Below, one piece after another: positions 1 through 52,499 of a DNA stretch of 64,000 nt. Made by a program: the position numbers and the translations under genes. The stretch lies in the NCBI GenBank assembly GCA_965655095.1, contig OZ296659.1, forward strand, positions 64,108,001 through 64,172,000, written 5' to 3'. Below the pieces are notes generated by a model. That model made no database searches. It was not told the DNA's origin and saw only the letters and a list, made by a program, of their open reading frames with translations. This DNA is from Haplodiscus bocki. Its lineage: Eukaryota. Position 1 is the first letter of the stretch. The number at the start of each line of letters is the position of its first letter.

Positions 1-3000
1 TCAAGCATTGGCTGTTTGCCGATGGAAATCTACAGAATTCAATTTCGCAGTTTACTGAACATCAATATGCCACACACACCGTGACATCAGCTGAATGTGA
101 ATTTTTGTCGAAGTTTTGCATAACTTTTTGGTGCTTTGATACGGTATAAAAACGAACCCGGAACCTTTCTCATTCGCAGTGGTACCTGCACTCGAGGGCT
201 AATTTGGCAAATTACGTCGCTCAAACCTCACAATTGAGATTTGACAGGTTGGGGTTGTCCTTTCTACAAGTGGCAGAACATGGTCAATATGCAGAGGCTT
301 CAAAATGTTTGAGAGTCTGGAAAGGCTCCCTTCTATATGTTTCACTGTTGTGCAACTCTTCTGCATAGGGCAAATGCGAACGCTCTCGGTAGCAGACCCT
401 CCTACTTCGCTAGAAGATGTAAGTTTTTGTCAGGGGAACAAACTTCTTCAGCCAGCATTGTGAACTAAGTGTTCGAGCACAATTAAAAACCAACGAGGAA
501 GTTAGGTACGAATTGTGGAGGACTTAACTTTGAGTCATTCCGAAGCTCAGATTTTTTTGGGGTTTTTTTTCTTGTGACCGTCTTTGAGACATTTCTCTCA
601 TTAATTTTGTTGCGCATTGTATCGTTAGTGATTGTTTTTCTCAAGGTTTTGACCATTTTCGAGGTTTCTATGTCTTCCTCAAGTCTTTTCTCCTGCTTAA
701 AACACTGAAATTACTCTTACAAAAGGCGAATGAAACGGTAACGAAGATTAATAGTTAGTCGGCACAAAGACTTCGATACCTATCATTTTCGTTGTTCAAC
801 GCATCGCTGACAAGCATGCAGGAACTCTTGGTTGAAAACATGTTTAGCTGTAGTAGACAACGTTTCAGTCTGAAAGCATCTTCAAAACTAGATGTCACTA
901 GTTCCATTGTCTGCAGGAAGTCATAAAAAATAAAGGGAGTTTCTGGAAGCTGCCCTGCAAGAATCCCTACGCCATCTGGATTTGCGTGGTTGAATGGCAA
1001 ATACTTCTTCGAGAGGATTTCCGATGCGTCGAGAAAATGGGTTTTGATACGGACAGCAACAACCATACGGTGTTTTTTTCGCTCCGTTTGATGGAATTTC
1101 AATGCAATGGGTCTCCTGGTAATATAGTTTTCCGTTTTTCAAAACAGGTTTTTCTGAAACATTTTTCCCAGCAAGATCGAAAGGTAGCTGTACTTTTCCC
1201 AGGGTGCCAAAGCTTGTGTTTTTCACTCGTCATCTGGTATGCTAGCTACCTCTATTGAACGTTCCAGGCCTGATTTAAGCATTGTCTGAGAATTTTCGAA
1301 AGACTCTGATGTCGATAGAGAGGAATTAATAAGCATTCCTCTAATGAGCTCTTCAATGATTCTTGGAAGATGTCAGTGTTTCTTGCTGGAATCTTTGAAA
1401 AAAGCTTCACTGCAACAATCTTTCGAGAGAAACAAGGTTCTTGAAATACTAGAAGAGTAATGCATTTTCTGGCGTGAAGTGCCAACTCTCAGTCTACGGT
1501 AAACCGACGTATCAAAAACGTCTCGCCGCTTTTTTCAGACCATGAATGTATATATGATTTCTTCAACTTTGGGCAATGAAATGGCGTTTCGTAAACCAAG
1601 CCGCGAACGGTTAAGTTGTCTCAAAATACTTGCAGGGGAGAGGCTTCGTTGTTTAGCAAATTTTTTGCTTCCGAAAAATTCGCTATTTCATCGTAATCGT
1701 GCAAATGAACTTTTAACTCGTAGTGCGGAAAGAATTCCTTTGAGGTATACTTGGCAATGTCATTAAGTCCGTAGTGATATGAATGGCAAGGTATGGTTTA
1801 GGTGGAATAGTGCGTGTGTTCGGAGTATCACTGAAAAATTAGAAAATATTCTGGTGGTGGAAAGTGTAAAATAATTTTTTTCGACCCAAGGGCCAAAACA
1901 ATTTGGCAAAAACTTCTTAATGGGGTGTTGCAGAAAATTGTTTTGACATCTTACGCCTTTTCGCACCCAAAACAAACTTTGCAGTCTTTATCCGAAATCC
2001 TAGTAATGGTTTTCGGACAGTAAGGCAGATTTCTGTTTTTTTCCATGTAAACGTTTGCACAGAAGTTTTCGTTTTGCTTTCGGCTGCTTCTAGCCGGTTT
2101 TTATGGTTACTATTGTTTCGGAAATCTGGCGGTTTTTTTTTCTAGCCTGGCGAAGTTATGCGCCCCCTCTATTTTAAATGCTTGCAAATGTTTGATTGGA
2201 GGAATGATGAATCGAACGCGATTGGGGTCGAGCTACCGATGGAACTAGTTATCAATATTTTTCGTAGTATCTTGGAGCTTCAAAAGTTAGTTACGAATTT
2301 TCTAGCGATTAGTTTTTTTTGGCATTTTTTTAATTGTTTTCAAATTATGAATGTGCGGAAAACAACTGATTTTCCGGACACATGTTATCAGTAGCAGTAT
2401 TTTTGACGTCTTTCTTTAGGATACCAAAGCGAGTTGATGAGTTGAGGTACTCTAAAATAGTGGACTTCAGTCATCTTTACCATCTAGTACCACTATGAAT
2501 GAGTTTTTCCTCGAGTATGAGCAAGAAGAGCGTCTGTAAACTTTTCTTCATTCCACTGCTCTGGAAGCTGGTGGTTTTCGAAACCGCTATTGATGGGTGT
2601 CTGGTTCTTTTCAAACTGCAGACACGTGTTTTTTTTGAAAGAATGCAGACGTACATTTCTCATTGCAAGCGTCATCTCTGTGACCAAATCCAGTGGACAA
2701 GTTGGTTTTGGAATTTTTTCGCTTTCGAAACAGTTTATTTTCTTTTTCGAGCTCTCGGGTGCCACTGAGAAACCAAGATTACATCTGATCATCTGAAGCA
2801 TTGGCTGTTTGCCGATGGAAATCTACAGAATTCAATTTCGCAGTTTACTGAACATCAATATGCCACACACACCGTGACATCAGCTGAATGTGAATTTTTG
2901 TCGAAGTTTTGCATAACTTTTTGGTGCTTTGATACGGTATAAAAACGAACCCGGAACCTTTCTCATTCGCAGTGGTACCTGCACTCGAGGTCTAATTTGG

Positions 3001-6000
3001 CAAATTACGTCGCTCAGACCTCACAATTGAGATTTGACAGGTTGGGGTTGTCCTTTCTACAAGTGGCAGAACATGGTCAATATGCAGAGGCTTCAAAATG
3101 TTTGAGAGTCTGGAAAGGCTCCCTTCTATATGTTTCACTGTTGTGCAACTCTTCTGCATAGGGCAAATGCGAACGCTCTCGGTAGCAGACCCTCCTACTT
3201 CGCTAGAAGATGTAAGTTTTTGTCAGGGGAACAAACTTCTTCAGCCAGCATTGTGAACTAAGTGTTCGAGCACAATTAAAAACCAACGAGGAAGTTAGGT
3301 ACGAATTGTGGAGGACTTAACTTTGAGTCATTCCGAAGCTCAGATTTTTTTGGGGTTTTTTTTCTTGTGACCGTCTTTGAGACATTTCTCTCATTAATTT
3401 TGTTGCGCATTGTATCGTTAGTGATTGTTTTTCTGAAGGTTTTGACCATTTTCGAGGTTTCTATGTCTTCCTCAAGTCTTTTCTCCTGCTTAAAACACTG
3501 AAATTACTCTTACAAAAGGCGAATGAAACGGTAACGAAGATTAATAGTTAGTCGGCACAAAGACTACGATACCTATCATTTTCGTTGTTCAACGCATCGC
3601 TGACAAGCATACAGGAACTCTTGGTTGAAAACATGTTTAGCTGTAGGAGACAACGTTTCAGTCTGAAAGCATCTTCAAAACTAGATGTCACTGGTTCCAT
3701 TTTCTGCAGGAAGTCATAAAAAATAAAGGGAGTTTCTGGAAGCTGACCTGCAAGAGTCCCTACGCCATCTGGATTTGCGTGGTTGAATGGCAAATACTTC
3801 TTCGAGAGGATTTCCGATGCGTCGAGAAAATGGGTTTTGATACGGACAGCAACAACCATACGGTGTTTTTTCCGCTCCGTTTGATGGAATTTCAATGCAA
3901 TGGGTCTCCTGGTAATATAGTTTTCCGTTTTTCAAAACAGGTTTTTCTGAAACATTTTTCCCAGCAAGATCGAAAGGTAGCTGTACTTTTCCCAGGGTGC
4001 CAAAGCTTGTGTTTTTCACTCGTCATCTGGTATGCTAGCTACCTCTATTGAACGTTCCAGGCCTGATTTAAGCATTGTCTGAGAATTTTCGAAAGACTCT
4101 GATGTCGATAGAGAGGAATTAATAAGCATTCCTCTAATGAGCTCTTCAATGATTCTTGGAAGATGTCAGTGTTTCTTGCTGGAATCTTTGAAAAAAGCTT
4201 CACTGCAACAATCTTTCGAGAGAAACAAGGTTCTTGAAATACTAGAAGAGTAATGCATTTTCTGGCGTGAAGTGCCAACTCTCAGTCTACGGTAAACCGA
4301 CGTATCAAAAACGTCTCGCCGCTTTTTTCAGACCATGAATGTATATATGATTTCTTCAACTTTGGGCAATGAAATGGCGTTTCGTAAACCAAGCCGCGAA
4401 CGGTTAAGTTGTCTCAAAATACTTGCAGGGGAGAGGCTTCGTTGTTTAGCAAATTTTCTGCTTCCGAAAAATTCGCTGTTTCATCGTAATCGTGCAAATG
4501 AACTTTTAACTCGTAGTGCGGAAAGAATTCCTTTGAGGTATACTTGGCAATGTCATTAAGTCCGTAGTGATCTGAATGGCAAGGTATGGTTTAGGTGGAA
4601 TAGTGCGTGTGTTCGGAGTATCACTGAAAAATTAGAAAATATTCTGGTGGTGGAAAGTGTAAAATAATTTTTTTCGACCCAAGGGCCAAAACAATTTGGC
4701 AAAAACTTCTTAATGGGGTGTTGCAGAAAATTGTTTTGACATCTTACGCCTTTTCGCACCAAAACAAACTTTGCAGTCTTTATCCGAAATCCTAGTAATG
4801 GTTTTCGGACAGTAAGGCAGATTTCTGTTTTTTTCCATGTAAACGTTTGCACAGAAGTTTTCGTTTTGCTTTCGACTGCTTCTAGCCGGTTTTTATGGTT
4901 ACTATTGTTTCGGAAATCTGGCGGTTTTTTTTCTAGCCTGGCGAAGTTATGCGCCCCCTCTATTTTAAATGCTTGCAAATGTTTGATTGGAGGAATGATG
5001 AATCGAACGCGATTGGGGTCGAGCTACCGATGGAACTAGTTATCAATATTTTTCGTAGTATCTTGGAGCTTCAAAAGTTAGTTACGAATTTTCTAGCGAT
5101 TAGTTTTTTTTGGCATTTTTTTAATTGTTTTCAAATTATGAATGTGCGGAAAACAACTGATTTTCCGGACACATGTTATCAGTAGCAGTATTTTTGACGT
5201 CTTTCTTTAGGATACCAAAGCGAGTTGATGAGTTGAGGTACTCTAAAATAGTGGACTTCAGTCATCTTTACCATCTAGTACCACTATGAATGAGTTTTTC
5301 CTCGAGTATGAGCAAGAAGAGCGTCTGTAAACTTTTCTTCATTCCACTGCTCTGGAAGCTGGTGGTTTTCGAAACCGCTATTGATGGGTGTCTGGTTCTT
5401 TTCAAACTGCAGACACGTGTTTTTTTTGAAAGAATGCAGACGTACATTTCTCATTGCAAGCGTCATCTCTGTGACCAAATCCAGTGGACAAGTTGGTTTT
5501 GGAATTTTTTCGCTTTCGAAACAGTTTATTTTCTTTTTCGAGCTCTCGGGTGCCACTGAGAAACCAAGATTACATCTGATCATCTGAAGCATTGGCTGTT
5601 TGCCGATGGAAATCTACAGAATTCAATTTCGCAGTTTACTGAACATCAATATGCCACACACACCGTGACATCAGCTGAATGTGAATTTTTGTCGAAGTTT
5701 TGCATAACTTTTTGGTGCTTTGATACGGTATAAAAACGAACCCGGAACCTTTCTCATTCGCAGTGGTACCTGCACTCGAGGTCTAATTTGGCAAATTACG
5801 TCGCTCAGACCTCACAATTGAGATTTGACAGGTTGGGGTTGTCCTTTCTACAAGTGGCAGAACATGGTCAATATGCAGAGGCTTCAAAATGTTTGAGAGT
5901 CTGGAAAGGCTCCCTTCTATATGTTTCACTGTTGTGCAACTCTTCTGCATAGGGCAAATGCGAACGCTCTCGGTAGCAGACCCTCCTACTTCGCTAGAAG

Positions 6001-9000
6001 ATGTAAGTTTTTGTCAGGGGAACAAACTTCTTCAGCCAGCATTGTGAACTAAGTGTTCGAGCACAATTAAAAACCAACGAGGAAGTTAGGTACGAATTGT
6101 GGAGGACTTAACTTTGAGTCATTCCGAAGCTCAGATTTTTTTGGGTTTTTTTTTCTTGTGACCGTCTTTGAGACATTTCTCTCATTAATTTTGTTGCGCA
6201 TTGTATCGTTAGTGATTGTTTTTCTGAAGGTTTTGACCATTTTCGAGGTTTCTATGTCTTCCTCAAGTCTTTTCTCCTGCTTAAAACACTGAAATTACTC
6301 TTACAAAAGGCGAATGAAACGGTAACGAAGATTAATAGTTAGTCGGCACAAAGACTTCGATACCTATCATTTTCGTTGTTCAACGCATCGCTGACAAGCA
6401 TACAGGAACTCTTGGTTGAAAACATGTTTAGCTGTAGGAGACAACGTTTCAGTCTGAAAGCATCTTCAAAACTAGATGTCACTGGTTCCATTTTCTGCAG
6501 GAAGTCATAAAAAATAAAGGGAGTTTCTGGAAGCTGACCTGCAAGAGTCCCTACGCCATCTGGATTTGCGTGGTTGAATGGCAAATACTTCTTCGAGAGG
6601 ATTTCCGATGCGTCGAGAAAATGGGTTTTGATACGGACAGCAACAACCATACGGTGTTTTTTTCGCTCCGTTTGATGGAATTTCAATGCAATGGGTCTCC
6701 TGGTAATATAGTTTTCCGTTTTTCAAAACAGGTTTTTCTGAAACATTTTTCCCAGCAAGATCGAAAGGTAGCTGTACTTTTCCCAGGGTGCCAAAGCTTG
6801 TGTTTTTCACTCGTCATCTGGTATGCTAGCTACCTCTATTGAACGTTCCAGGCCTGATTTAAGCATTGTCTGAGAATTTTCGAAAGACTCTGATGTCGAT
6901 AGAGAGGAATTAATAAGCGTTCCTCTAATGAGCTCTTCAATGATTCTTGGAAGATGTCAGTGTTTCTTGCTGGAATCTTTGAAAAAAGCTTCACTGCAAC
7001 AATCTTTCGAGAGAAACAAGGTTCTTGAAATACTAGAAGAGTAATGCATTTTCTGGCGTGAAGTGCCAACTCTCAGTCTACGGTAAACCGACGTATCAAA
7101 AACGTCTCGCCGCTTTTTTCAGACCATGAATGTATATATGATTTCTTCAACTTTGGGCAATGAAATGGCGTTTCGTAAACCAAGCCGCGAACGGTTAAGT
7201 TGTCTCAAAATACTTGCAGGGGAGAGGCTTCGTTGTTTAGCAAATTTTCTGCTTCCGAAAAATTCGCTGTTTCATCGTAATCGTGCAAATGAACTTTTAA
7301 CTCGTAGTGCGGAAAGAATTCCTTTGAGGTATACTTGGCAATGTCATTAAGTCCGTAGTGATCTGAATGGCAAGGTATGGTTTAGGTGGAATAGTGCGTG
7401 TGTTCGGAGTATCACTGAAAAATTAGAAAATATTCTGGTGGTGTAAAGTGTAAAATAAATTTTTTCGACCCAAGGGCCAAAACATTTTGGCAAAAACTTC
7501 TTAATGGGGTGTTGCAGAAAGTTGTTTTGACATCTTACGCCTTTTCGCACCCAAAACAAACTTTGCAGTCTTTATCCGAAATCTTAGTAATGGTTTTCGG
7601 ACAGTAAGGCAGATTTCTGTTTTTTTCCAGGCAAACGTTTGCACAGAAGTTTTCGTTTTGCTTTCGGCTGCTTCTAGCCGGTTTTTATGGTTACTATTGT
7701 TTCGGAAATCTGGCGGAATATTTTCTAGAGTGGCGAAGTTATGCACCGCCTCTGTTTCAAATGCTTGCAAGAGTTTGATTGGAGGAATGATGAATTGAAG
7801 GCGATTGGAGTCAAGCTACCAATAGAACTAGTTATCAGTAATTTTTGTAGTATCTTGGAGCTTCAAAAGTTAGTTACGAATTTTCTAGCGATTAGTTTTT
7901 TTTGGCATTTTTTTAATTGTTTTCAAATTATGAATGTGCGGAAAACAACTGATTTTCCGGACACATGTTATCAGTAGCAGTATTTTTGACGTCTTTCTTT
8001 AGGATACCAAAGCGAGTTGATGAGTTGAGGTACTCTAAAATAGTGGACTTCAGTCATCTTTACCATCTAGTACCACTATGAATGAGTTTTTCCTCGAGTA
8101 TGAGCAAGAAGAGCGTCTGTAAACTTTTCTTCATTCCACTGCTCTGGAAGCTGGTGGTTTTCGAAACCGCTATTGATGGGTGTCTGGTTCTTTTCAAACT
8201 GCAGACACGTGTTTTTTTTGAAAGAATGCAGACGTACATTTCTCATTGCAAGCGTCATCTCTGTGACCAAATCCAGTGGACAAGTTGGTTTTGGAATTTT
8301 TTCGCTTTCGAAACAGTTTATTTTCTTTTTCGAGCTCTCGGGTGCCACTGAGAAACCAAGATTACATCTGATCATCTGAAGCATTGGCTGTTTGCCGATG
8401 GAAATCTACAGAATTCAATTTCGCAGTTTACTGAACATCAATATGCCACACACACCGTGACATCAGCTGAATGTGAATTTTTGTCGAAGTTTTGCATAAC
8501 TTTTTGGTGCTTTGATACGGTATAAAAACGAACCCGGAACCTTTCTCATTCGCAGTGGTACCTGCACTCGAGGTCTAATTTGGCAAATTACGTCGCTCAG
8601 ACCTCACAATTGAGATTTGACAGGTTGGGGTTGTCCTTTCTACAAGTGGCAGAACATGGTCAATATGCAGAGGCTTCAAAATGTTTGAGAGTCTGGAAAG
8701 GCTCCCTTCTATATGTTTCACTGTTGTGCAACTCTTCTGCATAGGGCAAATGCGAACGCTCTCGGTAGCAGACCCTCCTACTTCGCTAGAAGATGTAAGT
8801 TTTTGTCAGGGGAACAAACTTCTTCAGCCAGCATTGTGAACTAAGTGTTCGAGCACAATTAAAAACCAACGAGGAAGTTAGGTACGAATTGTGGAAGACT
8901 TAACTTTGAGTCATTCCGAAGCCCGGATTTTTTAGGTTTTTCATCTTGTGACCGTCTTTGAGACTTTTCTCTGCCAGTAATTTTGTTGCACATTGTATCG

Positions 9001-12000
9001 TTAGTGATTGTTTTTCTGAAAGGTTTTGACCTTTTTCGAGGTTGCTATGTCTTCCTCAAGTCTTTTCTCCTGCTTAAAACACTGAAATTACTCTTAGAAA
9101 AGGCGAATGAAACGGTAACGAAGATTAATAGTTAGTCGGCACAAAGACTTCGATACCTATCATTTTCGTTGTTCAACGCATCGCTGACAAGCATGCAGGA
9201 ACTCTTGGTTGAAAACATGTTTGGCTGTAGTAGACAACGTTTCAGTCTGAAAGCATCTTCAAAACTAGATGTCACTGGTTCCATTGTCTGCAGGAAGTCA
9301 TAAAAAATAAAGGGAGTTTCTGGAAGCTGCCCTGCAAGAATCCCTACGCCATCTGGATTTGCGTGGTTGAATGACATATACTTCTTCGAGAGGATTTCCG
9401 ATGCGTCGAGAAAATGGGTTTTAATACGGACAGCAACAACCCTACGGTGTTTTTTTTTCGCTCCGTTTGATGGAATTTCAATGCAATGGGTCTCCTGTTA
9501 ATATAGTTTTCCGTTTTTCAAAACAGGTTTTTCTGAAACATTTTTCCCAAAAAGGTTGAAAGGTAGCTGTACTTTCCCCAGGGTGCAAAAGCTTGTGTTT
9601 TTCACTCGTCATCTGGTATGCTAGCTACCTTATTGAACGTTCCAGGCCTGATTTAAGCATTGTCTGAGAATTTTCGAAAGTTTCTGATGTCGATAGAGAG
9701 GAATTAATAAGCATTCCTCTAATGAGCTCTTCAATGATTCTTGGAAGATGTCAGTGTTTCTTGCTGGAATCTTTGAAAAAAGCTTCACTGCAACAATCTT
9801 TCGAGAGAAACAAGGTTCTTGAAATACTAGAAGAGTAATGCATTTTCTGGCGTGAAGTGCCAACTCTCAGTCTACGGTAAACCGACGTATCAAAAACGTC
9901 TCGCCGCTTTTTTCAGACCATGAATGTATATGTGGACTTCTTCAACTTTGGGCAATGAAATGGCGTTTTGTAAACCAAGTTGAGAACGGCTAACTTGTCT
10001 CAAAGTACTTGCAGGGGAGAGGCTTCGATGTTTAGCTAATTTTTTGCTTTCGAAATTATCGCTACTTCATCGTAATCATGCAAAGGAGTTTTTAACTCGT
10101 AGTGCGGAAAGAATTCCTTTGAGGTATACTTGGCAATGTCATTAAGTCCGTAGTGATCTGAATGGCAAGGTATGGTTTAGGTGGAATAGTGCGTGTGTTC
10201 GGAGTATCACTGAAAAATTAGAAAATATTCTGGTGGTGGAAAGTGTAAAATAAATTTTTTCGACCCAAGGGCCAAAACATTTTGGCAAAAACTTCTTAAT
10301 GGGGTGTTGCAGAAAGTTGTTTTGACATCTTACGCCTTTTCGCACCCAAAACAAACTTTGCAGTCTTTATCCGAAATCTTAGTAATGGTTTTCGGACAGT
10401 AAGGCAGATTTCTGTTTTTTTCCAGGCAAACGTTTGCACAGAAGTTTTCGTTTTGCTTTCGGCTGCTTCTAGCCGGTTTCTATGGTTACTATTGTTTTGG
10501 AAATCTGGTGGTTTTTTTCCTAGCCTGGCGAAGTTATGCGCCCCCTCTATTTTAAATGCTTGCAAAAGTTTGATTGGAGGAATGATGAATCGAACGCGAT
10601 TGGGGTCGAGCTACCGATGGAACTAGTTATCAATATTTTTCGTAGTATCTTGGAGCTTCAAAAATTAGTCACGAATTTTCTAGCGATTAGTTTCTTTTGG
10701 CATTTTTTTAATTGTTTCCAAATAATGAATGTGCGGAAAACAACTGATTTTCCGGACACATGTTATCAGTAGCAGTATTTTTGACGTCTTTCTTTAGGAT
10801 ACCAAAGCGAGTTGATGAGTTGAGGTACTCTAAAATAGTGGACTTTAGTCATCTTTACCATCTAGTAACTTTTTGAATCAGGTTTTCCTCGAGTATAAGC
10901 AAGGAGAGCGTACGTAGACTTTCTTTCTTCCTTCCACCGCTCTAAAAACTGGTTGTTTTCGAAACTGCTATTGAAGGGGCGTCTGGTTTGTTTTCAAAGT
11001 TTAGACACGTTTATTTTTAGAAAATGCAGTCATACGTTTCTCATTGCAAGTGTCATCTCTGTGACCAAATCCAGTGGACAAGTTGGTTCTGGAATTTTTT
11101 CGCCGTTTGCTTTCGAAACAGTTTAATATTTTCTTTTTCGAGCTCTCGGGTGCCACTGAAAAACCAAGATTACATCTAATTTTCTCAAGAAGCATTGGCT
11201 GTTTGCCGATGGAAATCTACGGAATTCAATTTCGCAGTTTACTGAACATCAATATGCCACACACACACAGTGACATCAGCTGAATGTGAACTTTTTGTCG
11301 AAGTTTTGCATAACTTTTTGGTGCTTTCATACGGTATAAAAACGAACCCGGAACCTGTCTCATTCGCAATGGTACCTGCACTCGAAGGCAAATTTGGCAA
11401 ATTACGTCGCTCAGACCTCACAATTGAACTTTCACAGGCTGGGTAGTCCTTTCTTCAAGTGGCAGAACATGATCTTTATGCATAGGCTTCAAAATGTTCG
11501 AGAAACTGGGAAGGCTCCCTTCTATATGCTTCACTGTTGTGTAACTCTTCTGCATAGGGCAAATGCGAACGCTCTCGGTAGCAGACCCTCCTACTTCGCT
11601 AGAAGATGTAAGTTTTTGTCAGGGGAACAAATTTCTTCAGCCAGCATTGTGAACTAAGTGTTCGAGCACAATTAAAAACCAACGAGGAAGTTAGGTACGA
11701 ATTGTGGAAGACTTAACTTTGAGTCATTCCGAAGCCCGGATTTTTTAGGTTTTTCATCTTGTGACCGTCTTTGAGACTTTTCTCTGCCAGTAATTTTGTT
11801 GCACATTGTATCGTTAGTGATTGTTTTTCTGAAAGGTTTTGACCTTTTTCGAGGTTGCTATGTCTTCCTCAAGTCTTTTCTCCTGCTTAAAACACTGAAA
11901 TTACTCTTAGAAAAGGCGAATGAAACGGTAACGAAGATTAATAGTTAGTCGGCACAAAGACTTCGATACCTATCATTTTCGTTGTTCAACGCATCGCTGA

Positions 12001-41300: not shown

Positions 41301-41774
41301 AGTGGTCTTATGCCTTTTGGCACCGAAAACAAACTTTGCAGTCTTAGGCCGAAATCCTAATGGTTTTTGGACAATGAGGCAGGTTTCAGGTTTTTTCCGA
41401 GTTAAACTTTTGCTCGGAAGTTTTCGTTTTGCTTTCGGCTGCTTCTACCCGGTTTTCATGGCTACTATTGTTTCGGAAATCTGGCGATTTCTTTCTAGCG
41501 TGGCGAAGTTATGCGCCGCCTCTCCTTTGAATGCTTGCAAAGGTTTGATTGGAGGAATGATGAATTGAAACACGATTGGAGTCGAGCTACCAATGGAACT
41601 AGTTATCAGTATTTTTCGTAGTATGTTGGCGCTTCAAAAATCAGTTACAAAAGTTCTAGTGATTAATTTTTTTGGCGTTTTGTACTTGTTCCCAAATTAT
41701 GAATGTACGGTAAACAACTGATTTTCCCTACACATGTTATCAGTAGCAGTTTTTTTTGGACGACTCTCTTTAAA

Positions 41775-42816
41775 TAATCGTAATCGTGCCGAGGAGTTTT
41801 TGAATCGGAGTGCGGAAAGAATTCCTTTGTGGTACACTTAGCAATGTCATTAAGTCCCTAGTGACCTGACTCGCAAGGTATGGGTTAGGTGGAATAGTGC
41901 GTGTATTCGGGAGTATCACGAAAATTTTGGGAAATCTTTCTGGTGGTGAGAAGTGTAGAATAAACTTTTTTTGGATCCATGGGCCAAATTTTTTTCCAAA
42001 AGGTAGTAGGGGGTATTACAAAATTTTGTTTTGATAGCGCTGCTCGAAATTTTTTTTGAAATAAAATTGGGGTGTAACGTAGATTTTCATATTCTACTGG
42101 TTGGGAAAAGGGTTGAAAAGCGAAAAATTTCGTCAGTTCTAAGTCTAAAGTATCGGCTAGTAAAAACGGTGATCACGTACCGATCTCTGTCTTTTTTTGG
42201 GAACAAATAAGTTTAACCATAGTTGGGCTGTGAAGTAAAGCGACGGCCAACAACATGATTTTTCGATCAATTAATTGAGTTAGAGACACTGTGACAGATA
42301 CTTGTCTCAATTCATCATTTTCGGGCAAACATATCATTGACAAGTGGTCTTATGCCTTTTGGCACCGAAAACAAACTTTGCAGTCTTAGGCCGAAATCCT
42401 AATGGTTTTTGGACAATGAGGCAGGTTTCAGGTTTTTTCCGAGTTAAACTTTTGCTCGGAAGTTTTCGTTTTGCTTTCGGCTGCTTCTACCCGGTTTTCA
42501 TGGCTACTATTGTTTCGGAAATCTGGCGATTTCTTTCTAGCGTGGCGAAGTTATGCGCCGCCTCTGCTTTGAATGCTTGCAAAGGTTTGATTGGAGGAAT
42601 GATGAATTGAAACACGATTGGAGTCGAGCTACCAATGGAACTAGTTATCAGTATTTTTCGTAGTATGTTGGCGCTTCAAAAATCAGTTGCAAAAGTTCTA
42701 GTGATTAATTTTTTTGGCGTTTTGTACTTGTTTCCAAATTATGAATTTACGGGAAACAACTGTTTTTCCCTACAAATGTTATCAGTAGCAGTTTTTTTGG
42801 ACGACTCTCTTTAGAT
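41775..42816. repeat. 1,042-bp internal sub-duplication
   Basis: The same junction occurs at ~41775. ORFs 41302 and 42344 are 1042 bp apart. Confidence 0.88.
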
Positions 42817-45800
42817 TACCGAAGCGAGTTGATGAGTTGAGGTACTGTAAAATAGTGGGCTTCACTCATCTGTGCCATCTAGTACCACTCCGAATGAGTT
42901 TTTCCTCGAGTATAAGCAAGGAGAGCGTACTTAGACTTTGTTTCTTCATTCCACTGCTCTAAAAACGCGGGGTTTTTGGAAACTGTCATTGAAGGGCGTT
43001 TGGGTTTTTTTCAAACTTCAGACTCATTTATATTGAAAAAATGCAGACGTACATTTCTCATTGCAAGCGTCATCTCTGTGACCAAATCCAGTGGACAAGT
43101 TGGTTTTGCAATTTTTCGCCGTTTGCTGTGGAAACAGTTTTTTTTTCGAGCTCTCGGGTACCACTGAAAAACCAAGAATACGTAATTTTTCTGAAGAAGT
43201 AATGGCTGTTTGCCGAGGAAAATCTACAGAATTCAATTTCGCAGTTTGCTGAACATCAATATGCCACACTCATCGTGTTATCAGCTGAATTTGAACTTTT
43301 TGTCGGAGTTTTGCAAAAATTTATGGCGCTTTGATACGGTATAAAAACGGATATGGAACCATTCTCAATCCGAATGGTACTCGCACTCGATGGCTGTTTT
43401 GGCTAATTTACGTCGGTCGGATCTCACAATTGAACTTTCACAGGGTGGGGTTGTCCTTTCTTCAAGTGGCAGAACATGATCTTTATGCATAGGCTTCAAA
43501 ATGTTCGAGAAACTGGGAAGGCTCCCATCTATATGTTTCACAGTTGTGCAACTCTTCTGCATAGGGCAAATGCGAACGCTCTCCGTTGCAGATCCCTCCT
43601 ACTTCGCTAGAAATTGTGTGCTATTGTCAAGAGAACAAATTTCTTCAGCCAGCATTGTGAACTAAGTGTTCGAGCACAATTAAAAACCAACGAGGAAGTT
43701 AGGTACGAATTGTGTGAGGCTTAACTTTGAGTCTTTCCTAAACCGAGCCTTTTTGGGTTTTTTCTTGTGACTGTCTTTGAGACATATCTCAGAATTTTGT
43801 TACGCATTGTACCGTTAATGAATGTTTTTGTGGAAGGTTTTGACCAATTTCGAAGTTGCTGTCCTCCTTAAGTCCTTTGTCCTGCCTAAAACACTGAAAT
43901 TACTCTTACAAAACGCGAATGAAACGGTAACGAAGATTAATAGTCGGCACAAAGACTTCGATACCTATCATTTTCATTGTTCAACGCATCGCTGACTAGC
44001 ATGCAGGAAATCTTGATTGAAAACCTGTTTATCTGTAGGATAGAACGTTTCAGTCTCCAGCATGTTCAAAACTAGATATCACTGGTTTGATTTCCTGCAG
44101 GAATTCATGGAACGAAGTGATTTCGTGTGAGTTGCACTGCAAGAATCGCTACGCCATCTGGAATAGCGTGGTTGAATAGCATTGTTTTCCCTAAGAGGAT
44201 TTCAGATGCGTCGAAAAAATGGGTTCTGATATTGACAGCAACAACCATACGGTGAGAATTTCGCTCCGTTTGAAGGAGTTTCAATGCAATGGGTCTCCGG
44301 GTAATTTAGTTTTCCGATTTTCAAAAAAGGTTTTTTCTAAAACATTTTTGCCAGCGAAATTGAAAGGTCGCTGTACTTTCCCCATGGTGCCAAAGCTTGT
44401 ATTTTTCACTCGTCATCTGGTATGCTAAGTACCTTACTGAACGTTCCAGATCTGATTTAAGCATTGTCTGAGGATTTCCGAAAGGTTCTGATGACGATAG
44501 AGAAGAATTAATGACAAGCTTTCCTCTAAGCTCTTCAGTGATTCTTGGAAGATGTCAGTGTTTCTTGCTGGAATCTTTGATAAAACCTTAACTGCAACAA
44601 TCTTTCGGAAGGAACAAGGTTCTTGAAGTACGAGAAAAATATGCATTTCTTTGCGTGAAGTGCTAGCTTTTAAGTCTACGATAAACCCGACGTATCAAAA
44701 ACGTCTCGCCGCTTTTTTTCAGACCATGAATGTATATGTGGACTTCTTCAACTTTGGGCAATGAAATGGCGTTTTGTAAACCAAGTTGAGAACGGCTAAC
44801 TTGTCTCAAAGTACTTGCAGGGGAGAGGCTTCGATGTTTGGCTAATTTTTTGCTTTCGAAAATATCGCTACTTCATCGTAATCATGCAAAGTAACTTTTA
44901 AATCGGAGTGCGTAAAGAATTCATTTGTGGTACACTTAGCAATGTCTTTAAGTCCCTAGTGACCTGACTCGCAAGGTATGGGTTAGGTGGAATAGTGCGT
45001 GTATTCGGGGGTATCACGAAAAATTTGGAAATCTTTCTGGTGGTGAGAAGTGTAGAATAAACTTTTTTTGGATCCATGGGCCAAATTTTTTTCCAAAAGG
45101 TAGTAGGGGGTATTACAAAATTTTGTTTTGATAGCGCTGCTCGAATTTTTTTTTGAAATAAAATTGGGGTGTAACGTAGATTTTCATATTCTACTGGTTG
45201 GGAAAAGGGTTGAAAAGCGAAAATTTTCGTCAGTTCTAAGTCTAAAGTACCGGCTAGTAAAAACGGTGATCACGTACCGATCTCTGTCTTTTTTTGGGAA
45301 CAAATAAGTTTAACCATAGTTGGGCTGTGAAGTAAAGCGACGGCCAACAACATGATTTTTCGATCAATTAATTGAGTTAGAGACACTGTGACAGATACTT
45401 GTCTCAATTCATCATTTTCGGGCAAACTTTTCATTGACAAGTGGTCTTATGCCTTTTGGCACCGAAAACAAACTTTGCAGTCTTAGGCCGAAATCCTAAT
45501 GGTTTTTGGACAATGAGGCAGGTTTCAGGTTTTTTCCGAGTTAAACTTTTGCTCGGAAGTTTTCGTTTTGCTTTCGGCTGCTTCTACCCGGTTTTCATGG
45601 CTACTATTGTTTCGGAAATCTGGCGATTTCTTTCTAGCGTGGCGAAGTTATGCGCCGCCTCTGCTTTGAATGCTTGCAAAGGTTTGATTGGAGGAATGAT
45701 GAATTGAAACACGATTGGAGTCGAGCTACCAATGGAACTAGTTATCAGTATTTTTCGTAGTATGTTGGCGCTTCAAAAATCAGTTACAAAAGTTCTAGTG

Positions 45801-48800
45801 ATTAATTTTTTTGGCGTTTTGTACTTGTTTCCAAATTATGAATTTACGGGAAACAACTGTTTTTCCCTACAAATGTTATCAGTAGCAGTTTTTTTGGACG
45901 ACTCTCTTTAGATTACCGAAGCGAGTTGATGAGTTGAGGTACTGTAAAATAGTGGGCTTCACTCATCTGTGCCATCTAGTACCACTCCGAATGAGTTTTT
46001 CCTCGAGTATAAGCAAGGAGAGCGTACGTAGACTTTGTTTCTTCATTCCACTGCTCTAAAAACGCGGGGTTTTTGGAAACTGTCATTGAAGGGCGTTTGG
46101 GTTTTTTTCAAACTTCAGACTCATTTATATTGAAAAAATGCAGACGTACATTTCTCATTGCAAGCGTCATCTCTGTGACCAAATCCAGTGGACAAGTTGG
46201 TTTTGCAATTTTTCGCCGTTTGCTGTGGAAACAGTTTTTTTTTCGAGCTCTCGGGTACCACTGAAAAACCAAGAATACGTATTTTTTCTGAAGAAGTAAT
46301 GGCTGTTTGCCGAGGAAAATCTACAGAATTCAATTTCGCAGTTTGCTGAACATCAATATGCCACACTCATCGTGTTATCAGCTGAATTTGAACTTTTTGT
46401 CGGAGTTTTGCAAAAATTTATGGCGCTTTGATACGGTATAAAAACGGATATGGAACCATTCTCAATCCGAATGGTACTCGCACTCGATGGCTGTTTTGGC
46501 TAATTTACGTCGGTCGGATCTCACAATTGAACTTTCACAGGGTGGGGTTGTCCTTTCTTCAAGTGGCAGAACATGATCTTTATGCATAGGCTTCAAAATG
46601 TTCGAGAAACTGGGAAGGCTCCCATCTATATGTTTCACAGTTGTGCAACTCTTCTGCATAGGGCAAATGCGAACGCTCTCCGTTGCAGATCCCTCCTACT
46701 TCGCTAGAAATTGTGTGTTATTGTCAAGAGAACAAATTTCTTCAGCCAGCATTGTGAACTAAGTGTTCGAGCACAATTAAAAACCAACGAGGAAGTTAGG
46801 TACGAATTGTGTGAGGCTTAACTTTGAGTCTTTCCTAAACCGAGCCTTTTTGGGTTTTTTCTTGTGACTGTCTTTGAGACATATCTCAGAATTTTGTTAC
46901 GCATTGTACCGTTAATGAATGTTTTTGTGGAAGGTTTTGACCAATTTCGAAGTTGCTATGTCCTCCTTAAGTCTTTTGTCCTGCCTAAAACACTGAAATT
47001 ACTCTTACAAAACGCGAATGAAACGGTAACGAAGATTAATAGTCGGCACAAAGACTTCGATACCTATCATTTTCATTGTTCAACGCATCGCTGACTAGCA
47101 TGCAGGAAATCTTGATTGAAAACCTGTTTATCTGTAGGATAGAACGTTTCAGTCTCCAGCATGTTCAAAACTAGATATCACTGGTTTGATTTCCTGCAGG
47201 AATTCATGGAACGAAGTGATTTCGTGTGAGTTGCACTGCAAGAATCGCTACGCCATCTGGAATAGCGTGGTTGAATAGCATTGTTTTCCCTAAGAGGATT
47301 TCAGATGCGTCGAAAAAATGGGTTCTGATATTGACAGCAACAACCATACGGTGAGAATTTCGCTCCGTTTGAAGGAGTTTCAATGCAATGGGTCTCCGGG
47401 TAATTTAGTTTTCCGATTTTCAAAAAAGGTTTTTTCTAAAACATTTTTGCCAGCGAAATTGAAAGGTCGCTGTACTTTCCCCATGGTGCCAAAGCTTGTA
47501 TTTTTCACTCGTCATCTGGTATGCTAAGTACCTTACTGAACGTTCCAGATCTGATTTAAGCATTGTCTGAGGATTTCCGAAAGGTTCTGATGACGATAGA
47601 GAAGAATTAATGACAAGCTTTCCTCTAAGCTCTTCAGTGATTCTTGGAAGATGTCAGTGTTTCTTGCTGGAATCTTTGATAAAACCTTAACTGCAACAAT
47701 CTTTCGGAAGGAACAAGGTTCTTGAAGTACGAGAAAAATATGCATTTCTTTGCGTGAAGTGCTAGCTTTTAAGTCTACGATAAACCGACGTATCAAAAAC
47801 GTCTCGCCGCTTTTTTTCAGACCATGAATGTATATGTGGACTTCTTCAACTTTGGGCAATGAAATGGCGTTTTGTAAACCAAGTTGAGAACGGCTAACTT
47901 GTCTCAAAGTACTTGCAGGGGAGAGGCTTCGATGTTTAGCTAATTTTTTGCTTTCGAAATTATCGCTACTTCATCGTAATCATGCAAAGTAACTTTTAAA
48001 TCGGAGTGCGTAAAGAATTCATTTGTGGTACACTTAGCAGTGTCATCAAGTCCGTAGTGATGAATCGCAAGGTATGGGTTATGTGGAATATTGCGTGTTT
48101 TGCGGGTATCACGGAAATTTTGAAAATCTTTCCGTTGGTGGGATAGAATAAAGTTTTTTGGATCCAAGGGCCAAAACTATCTGCCAAGAACGTCCTAGGC
48201 GTGTTACAAAAAATTGTTTTGACATCTGTCTCCTCGAATTTTTACGAATTGAAACGGGTGTCATGAGGTTTTTTGTATTCTACTGATTCGGACAGAGATT
48301 CAAAAGCAAAAATGTTCGATTTGGTATCTGCTATATGTTGAAAGTGGATATGCTTTTCGAATTGTGTCTTGGAAGATTTGTGCTAAGTTCTAAGTATGAA
48401 GTGGCTGTTAGAAATAACGTTGATTACGGACCGATCTTTTTCATTATTTAAGAACAAATAAGTTTTACGATAGTTGGGCTTTGAAATAAAGCGACTACCA
48501 AAAACATGATTTGCCGATCAGATGTTTGAGTTGGAGACATTGTGACCGATGCTTGTCTGAATTCATCATTTTCGGGCAAACATTTCATTGACAAGTGGTC
48601 TTATGCCTTTTGGCACCGAAAACAAACTTTGCAGTCTTAGGCCGAAATCCTAATGGTTTTTGGACAATGAGGCAGATTTCAGGTTTTTTCCGAGTTAAAC
48701 TTTTGCTCGGAAGTTTTCGTTTTGCTTTCGGCTGCTTCTATCCGGTTTTCATAGCTACTATTGTTTCGGAAATCTGGTGATTTTTTCTACCGTTGCGAAG

Positions 48801-50194
48801 TTATGCGCCGCCTCAGTTTTAAATGCTTGCAAAAGTTTGATTGGAGGAATGATGAATTGAAACACGATTGGAGTCGAGCTACCAATGGAACTAGTTATCA
48901 GTATTTTTCGTAGTATCTTGGAGCTTCAGAAATCCGTTAGTTAAATTCTAGCGATTAAATTTTTTGGCGTTTTGTACTTGTTTCCAAATTTTGAATGTAC
49001 GGGAAACAACTGATTTTCCCTACACATGTTATCAGTAGCAGTTTTTTTGGACGACTATCTTTAAATTACCGAAGCGAGTTGATGAGTTGAGGTACTGTAA
49101 AGTAGTGAACTTCTCTCATTTTTTCCATCTAGTACCTTTCTGAATGAGATTCTCCTCGAGTATAAGCAAGGAGAGCGTATGTAGGCTTTCTTTCTTCATT
49201 CCACTGCCCTACAAACTGGGGTTTTGGAAACTGTCATTGAAGGGGCGTTTGGTTTTTTTTCAAACTTCAGACACATTTATATTGAAAAAATGTGGACGTA
49301 CGTTTCTCATTGCAAGCGTCATTTCTGTGACCAAGTCCAGTGGACAAGTTGGTTTTGGAATTTTTCGCCGTTTGCTTTGGTGACAGTTTATTGTTTTCTT
49401 TTTCGAGCTCTCAGGTACCACTGAAAAACCAAGATTACATATCTTTTTCTGTATAAGTAATGTCTGTTTGCCGAGGAAAATCTACAGAATTCAATTCCGC
49501 AGTTTATTGAACATCAATATGCCACACTCACCGTGATATCAGCTGAGTTTGAAGTTTTTGTCGAAGTTTCGCATAACTTCATGGTCCTTTGATACGGTAT
49601 AGAAACGGATCTGGAACCATTTTCGTTCTGAATGGTTATCGCACTGGAGGGCTAATTTGGCTAATTTTTTCGGTTGGACCTCACAATTAAACTTTCACAG
49701 CTTGGAGTTGTCCTTTCTACAAGTGGCAGAACATGATCAATATGCAGAGGCTTCAAAATGTTGGAGAATCTGGGAAGGCGCCTTTTTATATGTTTCACTG
49801 TTGTGCAGCTCTTCTGCATAGGGCAATTGCGAACGCTCTCGGTAGCAGACCCTTTCCACTTCGCCAGAGGATGTGTGTTATTGTCAAGGGAACAAACTTG
49901 TTTGCCAGCATTATCAACTAAGTGTTCGAGCACAATTATAAACCAACGAGGAATTTTGGTACGAATTGTGAAAGACTCAACTTCTACTCATTCGGAAACC
50001 GATTTTTTTGGGTTTTTTTGTCCGTCTTTGAGACGTTTCTCTGCCAGTAATTTTGTTGCGCATTGTGGTGAATGTTTTTCTGGGAAGTTTTGACCAGTTT
50101 TGAGACTGCTATGTCCTCCTTGAACCTTTTCTCCCGCCTTGAACACTGAATTACTCTTATAAAACGCGAATGAAACGGTAACGAGATTAATAGT

Positions 50195-51148
50195 TAGTCG
50201 GCACAAAGATTTCGATACCTATCATTTTCATTGTTCAACGCATCGCTGACTAACCTGCAGGAAATCTTGATTGAAAACCTGTTTAGCTGTAGGATACAAC
50301 GATTCAGTCTCGAGCATGTTCAATACTAGATGTCACTGGTTTCATTTTCTGCTGGAATTCATGAATTGAAGTGATTTTCTGTGAGCTGCCCTGCAAGAAT
50401 CGCTTCGCCATCTAGAATAGCGTGGTTGAATGGCATCCTTTTCCTTGACAGGATTTCAAGTGCGTCGAGAAAATGGGTTTTGATACGGACAACAGCAACC
50501 GTACGGTGATTCTTCTGCTCCGTTTGAAGGAGTTTCAATGCAATGGGTCTCCTGGTATTATAGTTTTCCGATTTTCAGAACAAGTTCTTTTGAAACATTT
50601 TTGTCAACAAGGTTGAAAGGTAGCTGTACTTTCCCCAGCGTGCCAAAGCTTGTGTTTTTCATTCGTCATCTGGTATGCTAGCTACATTATTGAACGTTCC
50701 AGATCTGATTTAAGCATTGTCTGAGGGTTTTCGAAAGGTTCTGATTTCGATAGAGAAGCATTCCTCTAAGCTCTTCAATGATTCTTGGTAGATGTCAGTG
50801 TTTCTGGCTAGAATCTTTGAAGAAATAAATACTGCGAGAGTCTTACGAGAGAAAAAATGTTCCTGAAAATTGAGTCGCAGAATAATGCATTGCCTTTCAA
50901 GCTCTTGCAAGACATCTGTGCAGATTCTTGCAAGAAGTGCCCACCTTTAAGTCTTCGATAAATCGACGTATCATTAACGTCTCGCCGCTTTTTTTCAGAC
51001 TATGAATGTATATGTGGATTTCTTCAACTTTGGGCATTGAAATGGCGTTTTGTAAACCAAGCCGGGAACGGCTAAGTCGTCTCAAAATACTTGCAGGGGA
51101 GAGGCTTGGTTGTATAGCAAGTTTTTTGCTTTCGGAATATTCGCTACT
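50195..51148 (-). pseudogene. Decayed protein-coding frame of unknown family inside the repeat monomer (best seen in the terminal copy)
   Basis: Manual translation gives ~69 stop-free codons (51148-50941), one frameshift, then 193 codons with only 3 stops (50940-50362). Other copies keep the downstream part open (755..1102, 14669..15103). No family recognised. Confidence 0.3.
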
Positions 51149-52152
51149 TCATCGTAATCGTGCCGACGAATTTTTGAATCGGAGTGCGGGAAGAATTCCT
51201 TTGTGGTACACTTAGCAATGTCATCAAGTCCCTAGTGACCTGACTCGCAAGGTATGGGTTAGGTGGAATAGTGCGTGTATTCGGGGGTATCACGGCAAGT
51301 TTCGAAAACTTTCCGGTGGTGGAAAGTGTAGAATAAAATGTTTTGGATCAAAACGCCAATTTTTTTTTCCAAAAACGTCTTGTCCAAAGACGTCTGGTCG
51401 AATTTTTTTGGAATTAAAATTAGGCTGTCACGTAGATTTTCGTGTTCTACTGATTCGGAAAGACGTTGAAAAGCGAAAAATTTCGATTTCGTATCTGCTA
51501 TATGTTGAAAGTGGATCTGCTTTTCGAATTGTGTCTGGGAAGGTTTCTGCTAACTTCTAAGTTTAAAGTGTCGGTTAGTGGAAATCTTGATTACAGACCG
51601 ATCTCTGTACTTTTTTAAAAAATTTAAGTTTACCGTATTTAGGCTTCAAAGTAAAGCGACGACCAAAAACATGATTTACTGATGAAATGTTTGAATTAGT
51701 GACACTGTGACAGGTACTTGTCTCAATGCGTATTTTCGAGCGAACATTTGATTGACAATTGGTGTAGCAGTTCTTGAAATTTCAATCAAACATGTAATCA
51801 ATTCAAGCTTTTCTCAGGATTTTTGATGTGTAATGTTTAGTTTTGATGTCGCCTGACAAGTCAATGTGTTGCGAAATTCCACTTCGTCTCTGTATAGTAT
51901 ATTTCAAGGTTATTGAAGCTGCCGAATTTACCATAACGCAATACGAAGTTAGGCGGTACACTATGTATGAGTAATGTTTTATCATTTTTTTCGATAGTTG
52001 AAAATGTCTTAAACACGAGGAAGCCCAGAAATCTGGCTATGAACGTCGTCTGATCTTAGCAAATTTATGGTCCAAAAAACGGCGATTTAGCTAATGCCAA
52101 TTGAACGATTGGCGGCTGATATTAGCGATGTCAACCCTGTTCGCTGTTGTAG

Positions 52153-52499
52153 GCTTCGGAACTTCGAAGAGCGTGAAAGCGACAGCTCTGGATGCAGCCA
52201 ATCACGGGTTTCGGACTGTTCTCGTTTCTGACGCTTGCTGCGAATTGGAAGATCAATCAAGAAGTCCCACAAAAAGACGAGTTAATGACGTCAGCGCAAA
52301 CGGAAACAGTGAGTGGCAAGAGCTACAGAAACGCGGAATTGCGATTGCTTCTACGGATGACGTTCAAAACATGCTCGCTTGTCGGGATAGAAGACCCGAG
52401 TTGGGCTACATCTCCGCACTGAATTACGCAATAAGTCTCAAGAAACTCACCACATTTGGCTCAGTGGCAAATGGGTCATTTAGACATATCATTGAATAG
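52153..52499 (+). CDS. Probable terminal exon of a nicotinamidase-like (isochorismatase/cysteine hydrolase superfamily, PncA/Naam-type) gene
   Basis: GFGTSKSVKATALDAANHGFRTVLVSDACC aligns with the PncA motif GLATDYCVKxTxLDAxxxGxxxxVxxDxC. The downstream V..M...RDRRPELGY matches my recollection of the C-terminus of invertebrate nicotinamidases (e.g. Drosophila Naam). In-frame phase-1 acceptors are at TGTTGTAG|52153 or ATATTAG|52126. Stop TAG is at 52497-52499. The N-terminal catalytic Asp/Lys region is absent. Confidence 0.85.

What the first reader, a model, noticed from the sequence alone, without database searches (positions are those of the whole stretch)
1..52499. A >51-kb macrosatellite may fill the last intron of a nicotinamidase-like gene
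Seen: only the C-terminal exon is present, ~390 bp downstream of the array, with intact in-frame splice acceptors and an uninterrupted 115-codon frame. No upstream nicotinamidase exon is recognisable in 51763-52150 or in the monomer. Known: the family needs N-terminal Asp/Lys and metal-binding residues, and satellite-filled giant introns exist in Drosophila Y-linked fertility genes. Inference: either the gene splices across a >52-kb, still-expanding satellite intron, making array length a possible regulator of expression, or the array orphaned the exon.
Basis: partly seen in the sequence, partly recalled or inferred. Interest (0 to 1): 0.72.

Follow-up and report, generated by a model that had tools for sequence, protein, structure and literature searches.

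The report
Home-grown 52-kb repeat inside gene intron
A 3-kb piece of one intron of a conserved nicotinamidase-like gene was copied head-to-tail into a 52-kb array, making that intron about 170 times longer than in a related species while the gene's exons stay intact; this is a clear, datable example of a known way introns grow, and it could not be checked against RNA.

Summary
The array is 52,482 nt long. It starts 718 nt left of the window and ends at 51763. It consists of 16 full units of 2.8 or 3.15 kb plus 6 internally deleted mini-units, tiled without gaps.

The missing upstream exons exist 4.4 kb left of the array: an EF-hand exon and the N-terminal two thirds of the nicotinamidase-like domain. 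The exon starting at 52153 completes the domain. This last intron is 57,298 nt here, 332 nt in a related species and 6,867 nt in another.

Both array edges are in the same register, joined by a non-homologous junction, so a piece of the intron was duplicated in place. The unit is not a genome-wide satellite.

All three exons are open and under strong purifying selection (omega 0.01-0.15). Open frames would be unlikely (about 1e-4) if the gene had been neutral since the array's birth.

A second assembly of the same species has exactly one more unit (+2,807 nt).

No RNA data were available, so splicing across the array is inferred. Any regulatory role of array length is untested. Arrays inside introns are already known in Drosophila and human. 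Other notes of this scan report other kb-unit arrays in this genome.

The parts
1..51763 (+). Part of the tandem array inside the window. The whole array is w -718..51763, 52,482 nt, and lies entirely within the last intron.
   Evidence: gapless tiling by one 3,155-nt unit; no N gap beside it.
1..1951 (+). Rest of the first, old edge unit. It starts at w -718, carries a 120-nt deletion, and is about 84-86% identical to the reference unit.
1949..21599 (+). Seven short-type units of 2.79-2.84 kb that lack unit positions 2784-3155. The three leftmost (anchor units U1-U3) are 99.1-99.6% identical to each other.
   Evidence: all share one secondary junction
21597..31845 (+). Mixed block: two short-type units (23405-26202, 26965-29762) and five internally deleted mini-units of 0.76 or 1.04 kb.
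31847..51763 (+). Six long-type units of 3.1-3.2 kb plus one mini-unit (41306-42348). The last unit (48599-51763) is the most diverged, about 84-85% identical to the others.
48585..48615 (+). Example of the primary unit-end/unit-start junction. It is non-homologous, with one extra C between the two ends.
   Evidence: sequence up to 48599 aligns with the array end at 51763; sequence from 48601 aligns with the array start at w -718
51662..51898 (.). Copy of a dispersed repeat of about 235 nt (many genomic copies, 72-80% identical). The right breakpoint of the original duplication (51763/51764) falls inside it.
   Evidence: One search shows a depth spike at 51670-51937.
51764..52152 (+). Unique 3' end of the intron (389 nt), with the acceptor AG at 52151-52152.
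52153..52499 (+). Last coding exon (phase 1). It holds the C-terminal third of the nicotinamidase-like domain plus a conserved tail. Stop at 52497-52499.
52500..52660 (+). Presumed 3' UTR, with AATAAA at 52635-52640. This is inferred only.
   Evidence: read from the sequence, no RNA support

Best explanation
The array is a locus-specific macrosatellite that arose inside the last intron of a live three-exon gene. The gene encodes an EF-hand plus nicotinamidase-like protein.

A piece of intron about 3.15 kb long, itself a patchwork of old transposon fragments, was duplicated in tandem once through a non-homologous junction. It then multiplied by unequal exchange or replication slippage. Along the way it produced a 2.8-kb deletion derivative that became the main amplifying form, and several mini-units.

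The intron grew to 57.3 kb. It is 332 nt in one related species. The gene is still under selection, so the array is most likely transcribed as part of the pre-mRNA and removed by splicing from the donor at C12:64102855 to the acceptor at window 52152. The array itself has no function of its own.

Shown here: the anatomy, the origin in place, the intron location by orthology, selection on the exons, and a one-unit length difference between two assemblies. Inferred: transcription through the array, and splicing across it.
For: Exons and intron: map exons A and B 5.1-6.0 kb left of the window, with an exact phase-1 join to 52153. The same intron position is seen in four species, with intron lengths of 332 nt, more than 820 nt and 6,867 nt in the others.

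Homology: exon-wise alignments to annotated animal nicotinamidases cover the whole domain across the split.

Origin in place: searches show both edges in the same register and a single shared junction. One search finds only short matches of 66-72% identity elsewhere in the 1.5-Gb genome.

History: neighbouring units are the most alike and edge units the most diverged. K2P distances run from 0.002 to 0.17.

Selection: omega is 0.01-0.15 in all exons, and about 0.09 on this lineage's branch for the last exon. P(all frames open if neutral) is about 1e-4 since the array's birth, and 0.03 since it held at least about 7 unit lineages.

Reality of the array: a second assembly is colinear at 99.7-99.9% identity and has an intron of 60,105 nt, which is 2,807 nt longer.

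No constraint within the unit: identity is flat at 80-94% along its length. There are no Rfam, tRNA or Pfam hits.
Against: There is no RNA evidence at all. The four public runs that hold the exon are genomic; their contigs run straight through the acceptor. No full-length spliced protein of this paralogue turned up among 1.84 billion cluster representatives or in the word searches.

The donor (GTTTGT) and the acceptor tract are not strong by general consensus. On the sense strand the array offers 15 GTRAGT motifs and 73 acceptor-like sites that could act as decoys.

The last exon taken alone would stay open by chance with P about 0.06 over the array's age (scaled). The most recent expansions are too young to test. 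dS between species is saturated, so branch estimates are rough.
Confidence: 0.72

Rival explanations
1. The gene died recently. Once the array passed some length, splicing or elongation failed. The last exon, or the whole gene, is now a young pseudogene that has not yet picked up disabling mutations.
For: There is no transcript evidence. Splice signals are weak and many decoy sites lie on the sense strand. The youngest units differ by only 0.2-0.8%, too little time for decay to show. The catalytic Cys and two metal-binding His are already lost. A canonical paralogue exists at C2:11.25 Mb.
Against: The same active-site changes are conserved in a related species under strong selection, so they are much older than the array. 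All three exons and all four splice sites are intact in two haplotypes, with one conservative Val/Met difference. P(open frames) is 0.03 if the gene had been neutral since the array held about 7 unit lineages, roughly 20 kb.
Confidence: 0.16
2. The array itself is functional. It might be a length-dependent timer or damper of the host gene's expression (intron delay), a source of small RNAs, or a block of regulatory chromatin. Its copy number would then be under selection.
For: The second assembly differs from this one by one unit. Copy number of large tandem repeats is associated with local expression in humans (bioRxiv 10.1101/2020.12.16.423078; title and abstract only). Fifty-two kb adds many minutes of transcription time (my own knowledge of elongation rates).
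Against: No conserved island lies within the unit. There are no Rfam or tRNA hits, and no ORF is conserved between old and young units. Three related species lack the array or have short introns. The internally deleted mini-units and the diverged edges look like neutral turnover.
Confidence: 0.08
3. The array is an assembly artefact: a smaller repeat that was wrongly expanded or mis-joined.
For: Long arrays of near-identical units are hard to assemble. The two assemblies disagree by one unit.
Against: Two separately deposited assemblies are colinear at 99.7-99.9% over the 46 kb I could compare, including both array edges. Most units differ from each other by 2-15%, enough to place long reads. 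No N gap lies within 53 kb. Short-read contigs cover the last diverged unit and the junction to unique DNA at single-copy depth.
Confidence: 0.03

Closest known systems
Satellite-filled gigantic introns of Drosophila Y-linked fertility genes (kl-3, kl-5; Fingerhut et al. 2019, PMC6508621)
   Same: A tandem array makes up most of an intron of an intact protein-coding gene, so it must be transcribed and spliced out for the gene to work. Here the array is 92% of the intron.
   Different: In Drosophila the repeats are simple satellites of a few bases, reach megabases, lie on a heterochromatic Y, and need dedicated RNA-binding proteins, and transcription through them has been shown. Here the units are 2.8-3.2 kb of ordinary intron DNA, total 52 kb, sit in one intron of an otherwise compact gene, and have no RNA data.
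Human megasatellites and macrosatellites made of interspersed-repeat-bearing units, some contained within an intron (Warburton et al. 2008, PMC2588610)
   Same: The unit is kilobases long and built from decayed transposon pieces. The array exceeds 10 kb, is specific to one locus, lies wholly inside an intron, and is a candidate copy-number polymorphism.
   Different: Here both original breakpoints, the junction, and an orthologous pre-expansion state (332-nt intron) can be read directly, so the origin and the fold-expansion are documented. The host is an invertebrate (an acoel worm according to other notes of this scan; I did not test that).
Other kb-unit tandem arrays noted in this same genome (scan notes s1-366627 and s1-352214)
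   Same: Arrays of 50-90 kb made of kb-sized units that arose by local head-to-tail copying.
   Different: Those are described as built from a hAT insertion or from dead gene copies, with no host gene. This one sits inside an intron of a conserved gene. I did not re-examine those loci.
Animal EF-hand nicotinamidase (Naam/PNC family, isochorismatase superfamily)
   Same: The domain order is the same: N-terminal EF-hand pair, then a nicotinamidase-like domain, then a C-terminal RDRRPELGY-type tail. Exon B is 35-40% identical to annotated nicotinamidases.
   Different: Ser replaces the catalytic Cys. Two of the metal-binding His are replaced (DWHP to DSFP, HCVQ to TCVQ). There is a lineage-specific insert after DAC. 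A canonical copy with Cys lies elsewhere in the genome.

Membership tests
Tandem-repeat-filled large intron (intron gigantism by satellite DNA) | The array lies wholly between two exons of one protein-coding gene, on the gene's scaffold and strand | tested here: met
   Exon B ends at C12:64102854. The array spans C12:64107283-64159763. Exon C starts at C12:64160153. Exon order and phase match the orthologues.
Tandem-repeat-filled large intron (intron gigantism by satellite DNA) | Flanking exons are intact and under selection | tested here: met
   Frames are open and GT/AG sites are present. Omega is 0.01-0.15. The neutral-decay simulation gives P about 1e-4.
Tandem-repeat-filled large intron (intron gigantism by satellite DNA) | The intron with its repeats is transcribed and spliced out | not testable with these tools
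   No RNA run holds the exon. The four runs laid are genomic contigs. No spliced full-length protein is in the libraries.
Tandem-repeat-filled large intron (intron gigantism by satellite DNA) | Simple short-unit satellite, hundreds of kb to Mb (Drosophila Y type) | tested here: not met
   Units are 2.8-3.2 kb and the array is 52.5 kb.
Macrosatellite / megasatellite VNTR | Head-to-tail units of at least 1 kb forming an array of more than 10 kb | tested here: met
   There are 16 full and 6 partial units over 52,482 nt, tiled without gaps.
Macrosatellite / megasatellite VNTR | Specific to one locus, not a genome-wide satellite family | tested here: met
   Elsewhere in the genome there are only 130-430-nt matches at 66-72% identity. 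The tool notes that its counts are lower bounds.
Macrosatellite / megasatellite VNTR | Copy number varies between individuals or haplotypes | tested here: inconclusive
   The intron is 57,298 nt in this assembly and 60,105 nt in the second, a difference of 2,807 nt or one unit. The extra unit lies between w 15598 and 42102, but I could not retrieve that stretch. An assembly error in either assembly is not excluded.
Nicotinamidase (PncA/Pnc1/Naam) | Isochorismatase-fold domain homologous to known nicotinamidases | tested here: met
   Exon C scores 33 bits against Pfam PF00857, cut-off 27. The exon B frame matches annotated nicotinamidases at E 1e-24. Alignments A1 and A2 show the fit.
Nicotinamidase (PncA/Pnc1/Naam) | Catalytic triad Asp, Lys, Cys | tested here: not met
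   Asp (VDVQND) and Lys (YKG) are kept. Cys is Ser in this species and in sp2, Cys in sp3 and Gly in sp4.
Nicotinamidase (PncA/Pnc1/Naam) | Metal-binding Asp/His/His | tested here: not met
   DWHP has become DSFP, and HCVQ has become TCVQ (KCVQ in sp2). Only the H of HxSF is kept. Which residues bind metal is my own knowledge of PncA/Pnc1 structures.

The most novel reading that the evidence does not exclude
Array copy number is a heritable, fast-mutating dial on the output of a conserved EF-hand nicotinamidase-like pseudoenzyme. Each 2.8-kb unit would add transcription time and decoy splice sites, so individuals with different unit numbers would express the gene differently or produce array-derived RNAs.
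Probability: 0.08. Interest if true: 0.6.

Novelty: new member of a known kind. Interest (0 to 1): 0.4.

Why it matters
This locus shows how an intron can grow about 170-fold without transposon bursts, through one small duplication followed by unequal exchange, and every step can still be read. The two original breakpoints and the junction are visible. So are a deletion derivative that took over, mini-units, old edges with a young core, and an orthologous short intron for comparison.

It also gives a natural test case for how much repeated DNA an ordinary gene's splicing can tolerate, because the exons have stayed under selection while the array grew. The locus is easy to genotype for asking whether intron length affects expression.

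It does not reveal a new kind of element. Arrays inside introns are known in Drosophila and humans.

Tried and rejected
1. TRF found nothing because its period limit is 500. I used the repeat finder and BLAST instead.

2. An upstream extension of the exon is rejected. The genome HMM match reaches 52080 through a TAA, but it adds no score over the exon alone and has no counterpart in sp2.

3. The acceptor at 52126 is in frame but would insert 9 residues that are absent from all homologues.

4. The monomer does not look like a gene or an RNA. Its ORFs have no Pfam hit and are not kept in old units. There are no Rfam or tRNA hits.

5. The monomer is not a genome-wide satellite.

6. A recombination origin between two copies of one repeat is rejected. 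Unit start and right flank are not homologous, although the right breakpoint lies inside a dispersed 235-nt repeat.

7. RNA evidence: the only runs holding the exon are genomic.

8. A spliced full-length protein in public libraries: none found. The word search could not see a 375-aa product from a 206-aa query because of its length limit.

9. Locating the extra unit of the second assembly: one look-up was a coordinate slip, one worked, and two ORFs were not on record.

All searches, alignments and dN/dS were done exon by exon.

Full report
**Coordinates.** The window is G000:C12:64108001-64172000, plus strand, in a 1.5-Gb genome. For positions left of the window I write w = C12 position minus 64108000. 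The 200 kb to the left were fetched as L007-L026.

**1. The array**

Direct-repeat families spaced 2.79-3.16 kb apart fill the window up to about 51.7 kb. TRF reports nothing because its longest period is 500. BLAST of one unit against the window plus its left flank shows that the array begins only 718 nt left of the window. It abuts unique sequence there; the nearest N run is 53 kb away.

I re-registered the unit on the array's own edges, taking window 45445-48599 (3,155 nt) as the reference. The tiling then runs from w -718 to 51763 without gaps, 52,482 nt in all. It comprises:

| Kind of unit | Number | Note |
|---|---|---|
| Full units | 16 | see the two types below |
| Short type, 2.79-2.84 kb | among the full units | lacks unit positions 2784-3155 |
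| Long type, 3.1-3.2 kb | among the full units | complete |
| Mini-units, 0.76 or 1.04 kb | 6 | internally deleted |

The sequence of an internal junction up to 48599 aligns with the array's right end up to 51763. The sequence from 48601 aligns with the array's left start at -718. The join is non-homologous, with one extra C. Both edges are therefore in the same register. That is the signature of a tandem duplication of a resident segment, not of an imported satellite.

All short-type units share a second junction, unit position 2783 joined directly to the unit start. They therefore descend from one deletion derivative.

The unit is not a genome-wide repeat. Elsewhere there are only 130-430-nt matches at 66-72% identity, which look like old transposon fragments. 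The right breakpoint falls inside a copy of a dispersed repeat of about 235 nt, at 51662-51898 (depth spike).

Pairwise identities show that neighbours are the most alike:

- U1-U3: 99.1-99.6%.
- U13/U15: 99.8%.
- Right edge unit: about 85% to everything else.

K2P distances range from about 0.002 to 0.17. Identity along the unit is flat at 80-94% in 150-nt windows, with no conserved island. There are no Rfam families or tRNAs. The unit's ORFs have no Pfam hit and are not kept in old units.

**2. The gene**

The exon at 52153-52499 scores 33 bits against Pfam Isochorismatase, profile positions 117-156. A word search with its open frame found the same ORF in a second assembly of this species (P0001). 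It also found orthologous ORFs at 73% and 66% identity in two other organisms. The exhaustive search added a fourth at 44%.

The contig of the 73% orthologue (L027) carries three exons:

- an EF-hand exon;
- a 556-nt exon encoding profile positions 1-120 of the domain;
- after an intron of only 332 nt, the last exon.

L027:8821-9687 aligns to w -6006..-5143 of our genome, and L027:10015-10356 aligns to window 52151-52501.

Reading L007 gives exon A at L007 4006-4230 (ATG to a GTGAGT donor) and exon B at 4299-4854. Exon B ends with the first base of a Gly codon, and window 52153-52154 completes that codon. The join reads VFVT-G-FGTSKSV. It aligns with the VFVSGLATDYCV motif of annotated animal nicotinamidases.

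The intron is C12:64102855-64160152, 57,298 nt, of which the array is 92%. The same phase-1 intron position is used in all four species:

| Species | Locus | Length of this intron |
|---|---|---|
| This genome | C12 | 57,298 nt |
| sp2 | L027 | 332 nt |
| sp3 | L030 | more than 820 nt (contig ends) |
| sp4 | L031 | 6,867 nt, with an LTR-like pair of direct repeats 5.2 kb apart |

The 4.4 kb of unique intron left of the array contains copies of two dispersed repeat families. The intron had therefore already grown to roughly 8 kb by insertions before the duplication.

**3. Is the gene alive?**

- **Splice sites and frames.** All four splice sites are GT/AG and all three frames are open.
- **Pairwise omega.** Exon A is 0.013 (ML; NG86 could not be computed because dS is saturated). 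Exon B is 0.05. Exon C is 0.08-0.15.
- **Branch estimate.** Three-taxon arithmetic on the values gives omega of about 0.09 on this lineage for exon C, no higher than in the others. Because dS is saturated, this is rough.
- **Neutral-decay simulation.** I used the transition/transversion ratio (1.06) and the indel rate (0.08 per substitution) measured in the array itself.

| Neutral since | mu*t | P(all three exons stay open) |
|---|---|---|
| The first duplication | 0.085 | about 1e-4 |
| The array held at least about 7 distinct unit lineages (about 20 kb) | 0.03 | 0.03 |
| A recent stage of the array | 0.005 | 0.55 |

- **Exon C alone.** Its chance of staying open over the full age is only about 0.06, scaled.
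- The total dN between species in exons A and B (0.04-0.09) is no larger than a neutral phase of 0.085 alone would produce. That also argues for continuous constraint.
- **Conclusion.** Orphaning at the array's birth is rejected. A very recent death cannot be excluded.

**4. Is the array real and still changing?**

A second assembly (ENA ERZ26859043, contig ctg88492) is colinear with ours at 99.7-99.9% over w -11081..15598 and 42102..62499. It is a different haplotype: there is one Val/Met difference in exon B.

From the record coordinates of the exon B and exon C ORFs, its intron is 60,105 nt, which is 2,807 nt longer, or exactly one unit. The extra unit lies between w 15598 and 42102. I could not retrieve that stretch.

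**5. RNA**

The only public runs that hold the exon are from one study and are genomic. Their contigs run uninterrupted from 51265 to 52817, across the acceptor. No full-length product of this paralogue exists among the 1.84 billion representatives.

Splicing across the array is therefore an inference from conservation. On the sense strand the array carries 15 GTRAGT motifs and 73 acceptor-like sites. The donor is GTTTGT. The whole intron, unique parts included, has T>A skew on the sense strand (-0.12), while the upstream intergenic DNA has none. This fits long residence in a transcribed intron, but it is weak evidence because the units are copies of one sequence.

**6. Comparison with what is known**

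Tandem arrays in introns are known. In Drosophila Y-linked genes, megabase simple-satellite introns are transcribed and need special factors (PMC6508621). In the human genome, several arrays larger than 10 kb lie within an intron, and 'megasatellites' have units built of interspersed repeats (PMC2588610).

This locus belongs to the second kind and works, presumably, like a small version of the first. Other notes of this scan report further 50-90-kb kb-unit arrays in the same genome, and call the organism an acoel worm. I did not test either claim.

**7. Verdict**

The mechanism of origin is shown. Function of the array is unlikely. Expression across the array is untested. This is a new member of a known kind.

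Noticed in passing
window 52161-52175; L007 4470-4520 and 4655-4670: The protein has Ser for the catalytic Cys (GTSKSV against ATDYCV). It has also lost two metal-binding His (DSFP for DWHP, TCVQ for HCVQ). The catalytic position is Ser in sp2 as well, Cys in sp3 and Gly in sp4. Even so, the gene is under strong purifying selection, so it is a candidate pseudoenzyme or an enzyme with altered chemistry. A canonical copy with Cys lies at C2:11.25 Mb (L001).
   Followed up: partly
L007 4855-4860; L027 9685-9690: The donor of the expanded intron is GTTTGT here and GTTCGC in sp2, with T at position +3 in both. This fits another note of this scan about GTT-type donors in this lineage.
   Followed up: no
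window 52742-52875, 53412-53679, 54618-54751: Short stretches show 20-100-fold excess k-mer depth in all four genomic runs, so they are high-copy dispersed repeats. The loose ends at 53506 read like a tRNA-derived SINE head (CGAACCTGGGACC...).
   Followed up: no
L029 8-3086 (about 2.3-5.3 kb upstream of exon A, minus strand): Remains of a LINE lie just upstream of the gene: ORFs with reverse transcriptase and endonuclease/exonuclease/phosphatase domains.
   Followed up: no
L031 3678-4238 and 8893-9292: In the fourth species the orthologous intron (6,867 nt) holds a pair of direct repeats of about 600 nt, 5.2 kb apart and 88-98% identical. This looks like an LTR element insertion, an independent way in which the same intron grew.
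   Followed up: partly
L007 5274-5545 and 6044-6606 (unique left part of the intron): There are copies of two dispersed repeat families, about 270 nt and about 560 nt long, up to 87% identical to copies on many chromosomes. These are relatively young insertions in the intron.
   Followed up: no
L027 5498-6025: About 3 kb upstream of the sp2 orthologue, an ORF gives a weak hit to the STIM1 Orai-activating region (SOAR, E 9e-4). The EF-hand exon also gave a faint STIM1 EF-hand hit. This may be a neighbouring STIM-like gene or chance.
   Followed up: no
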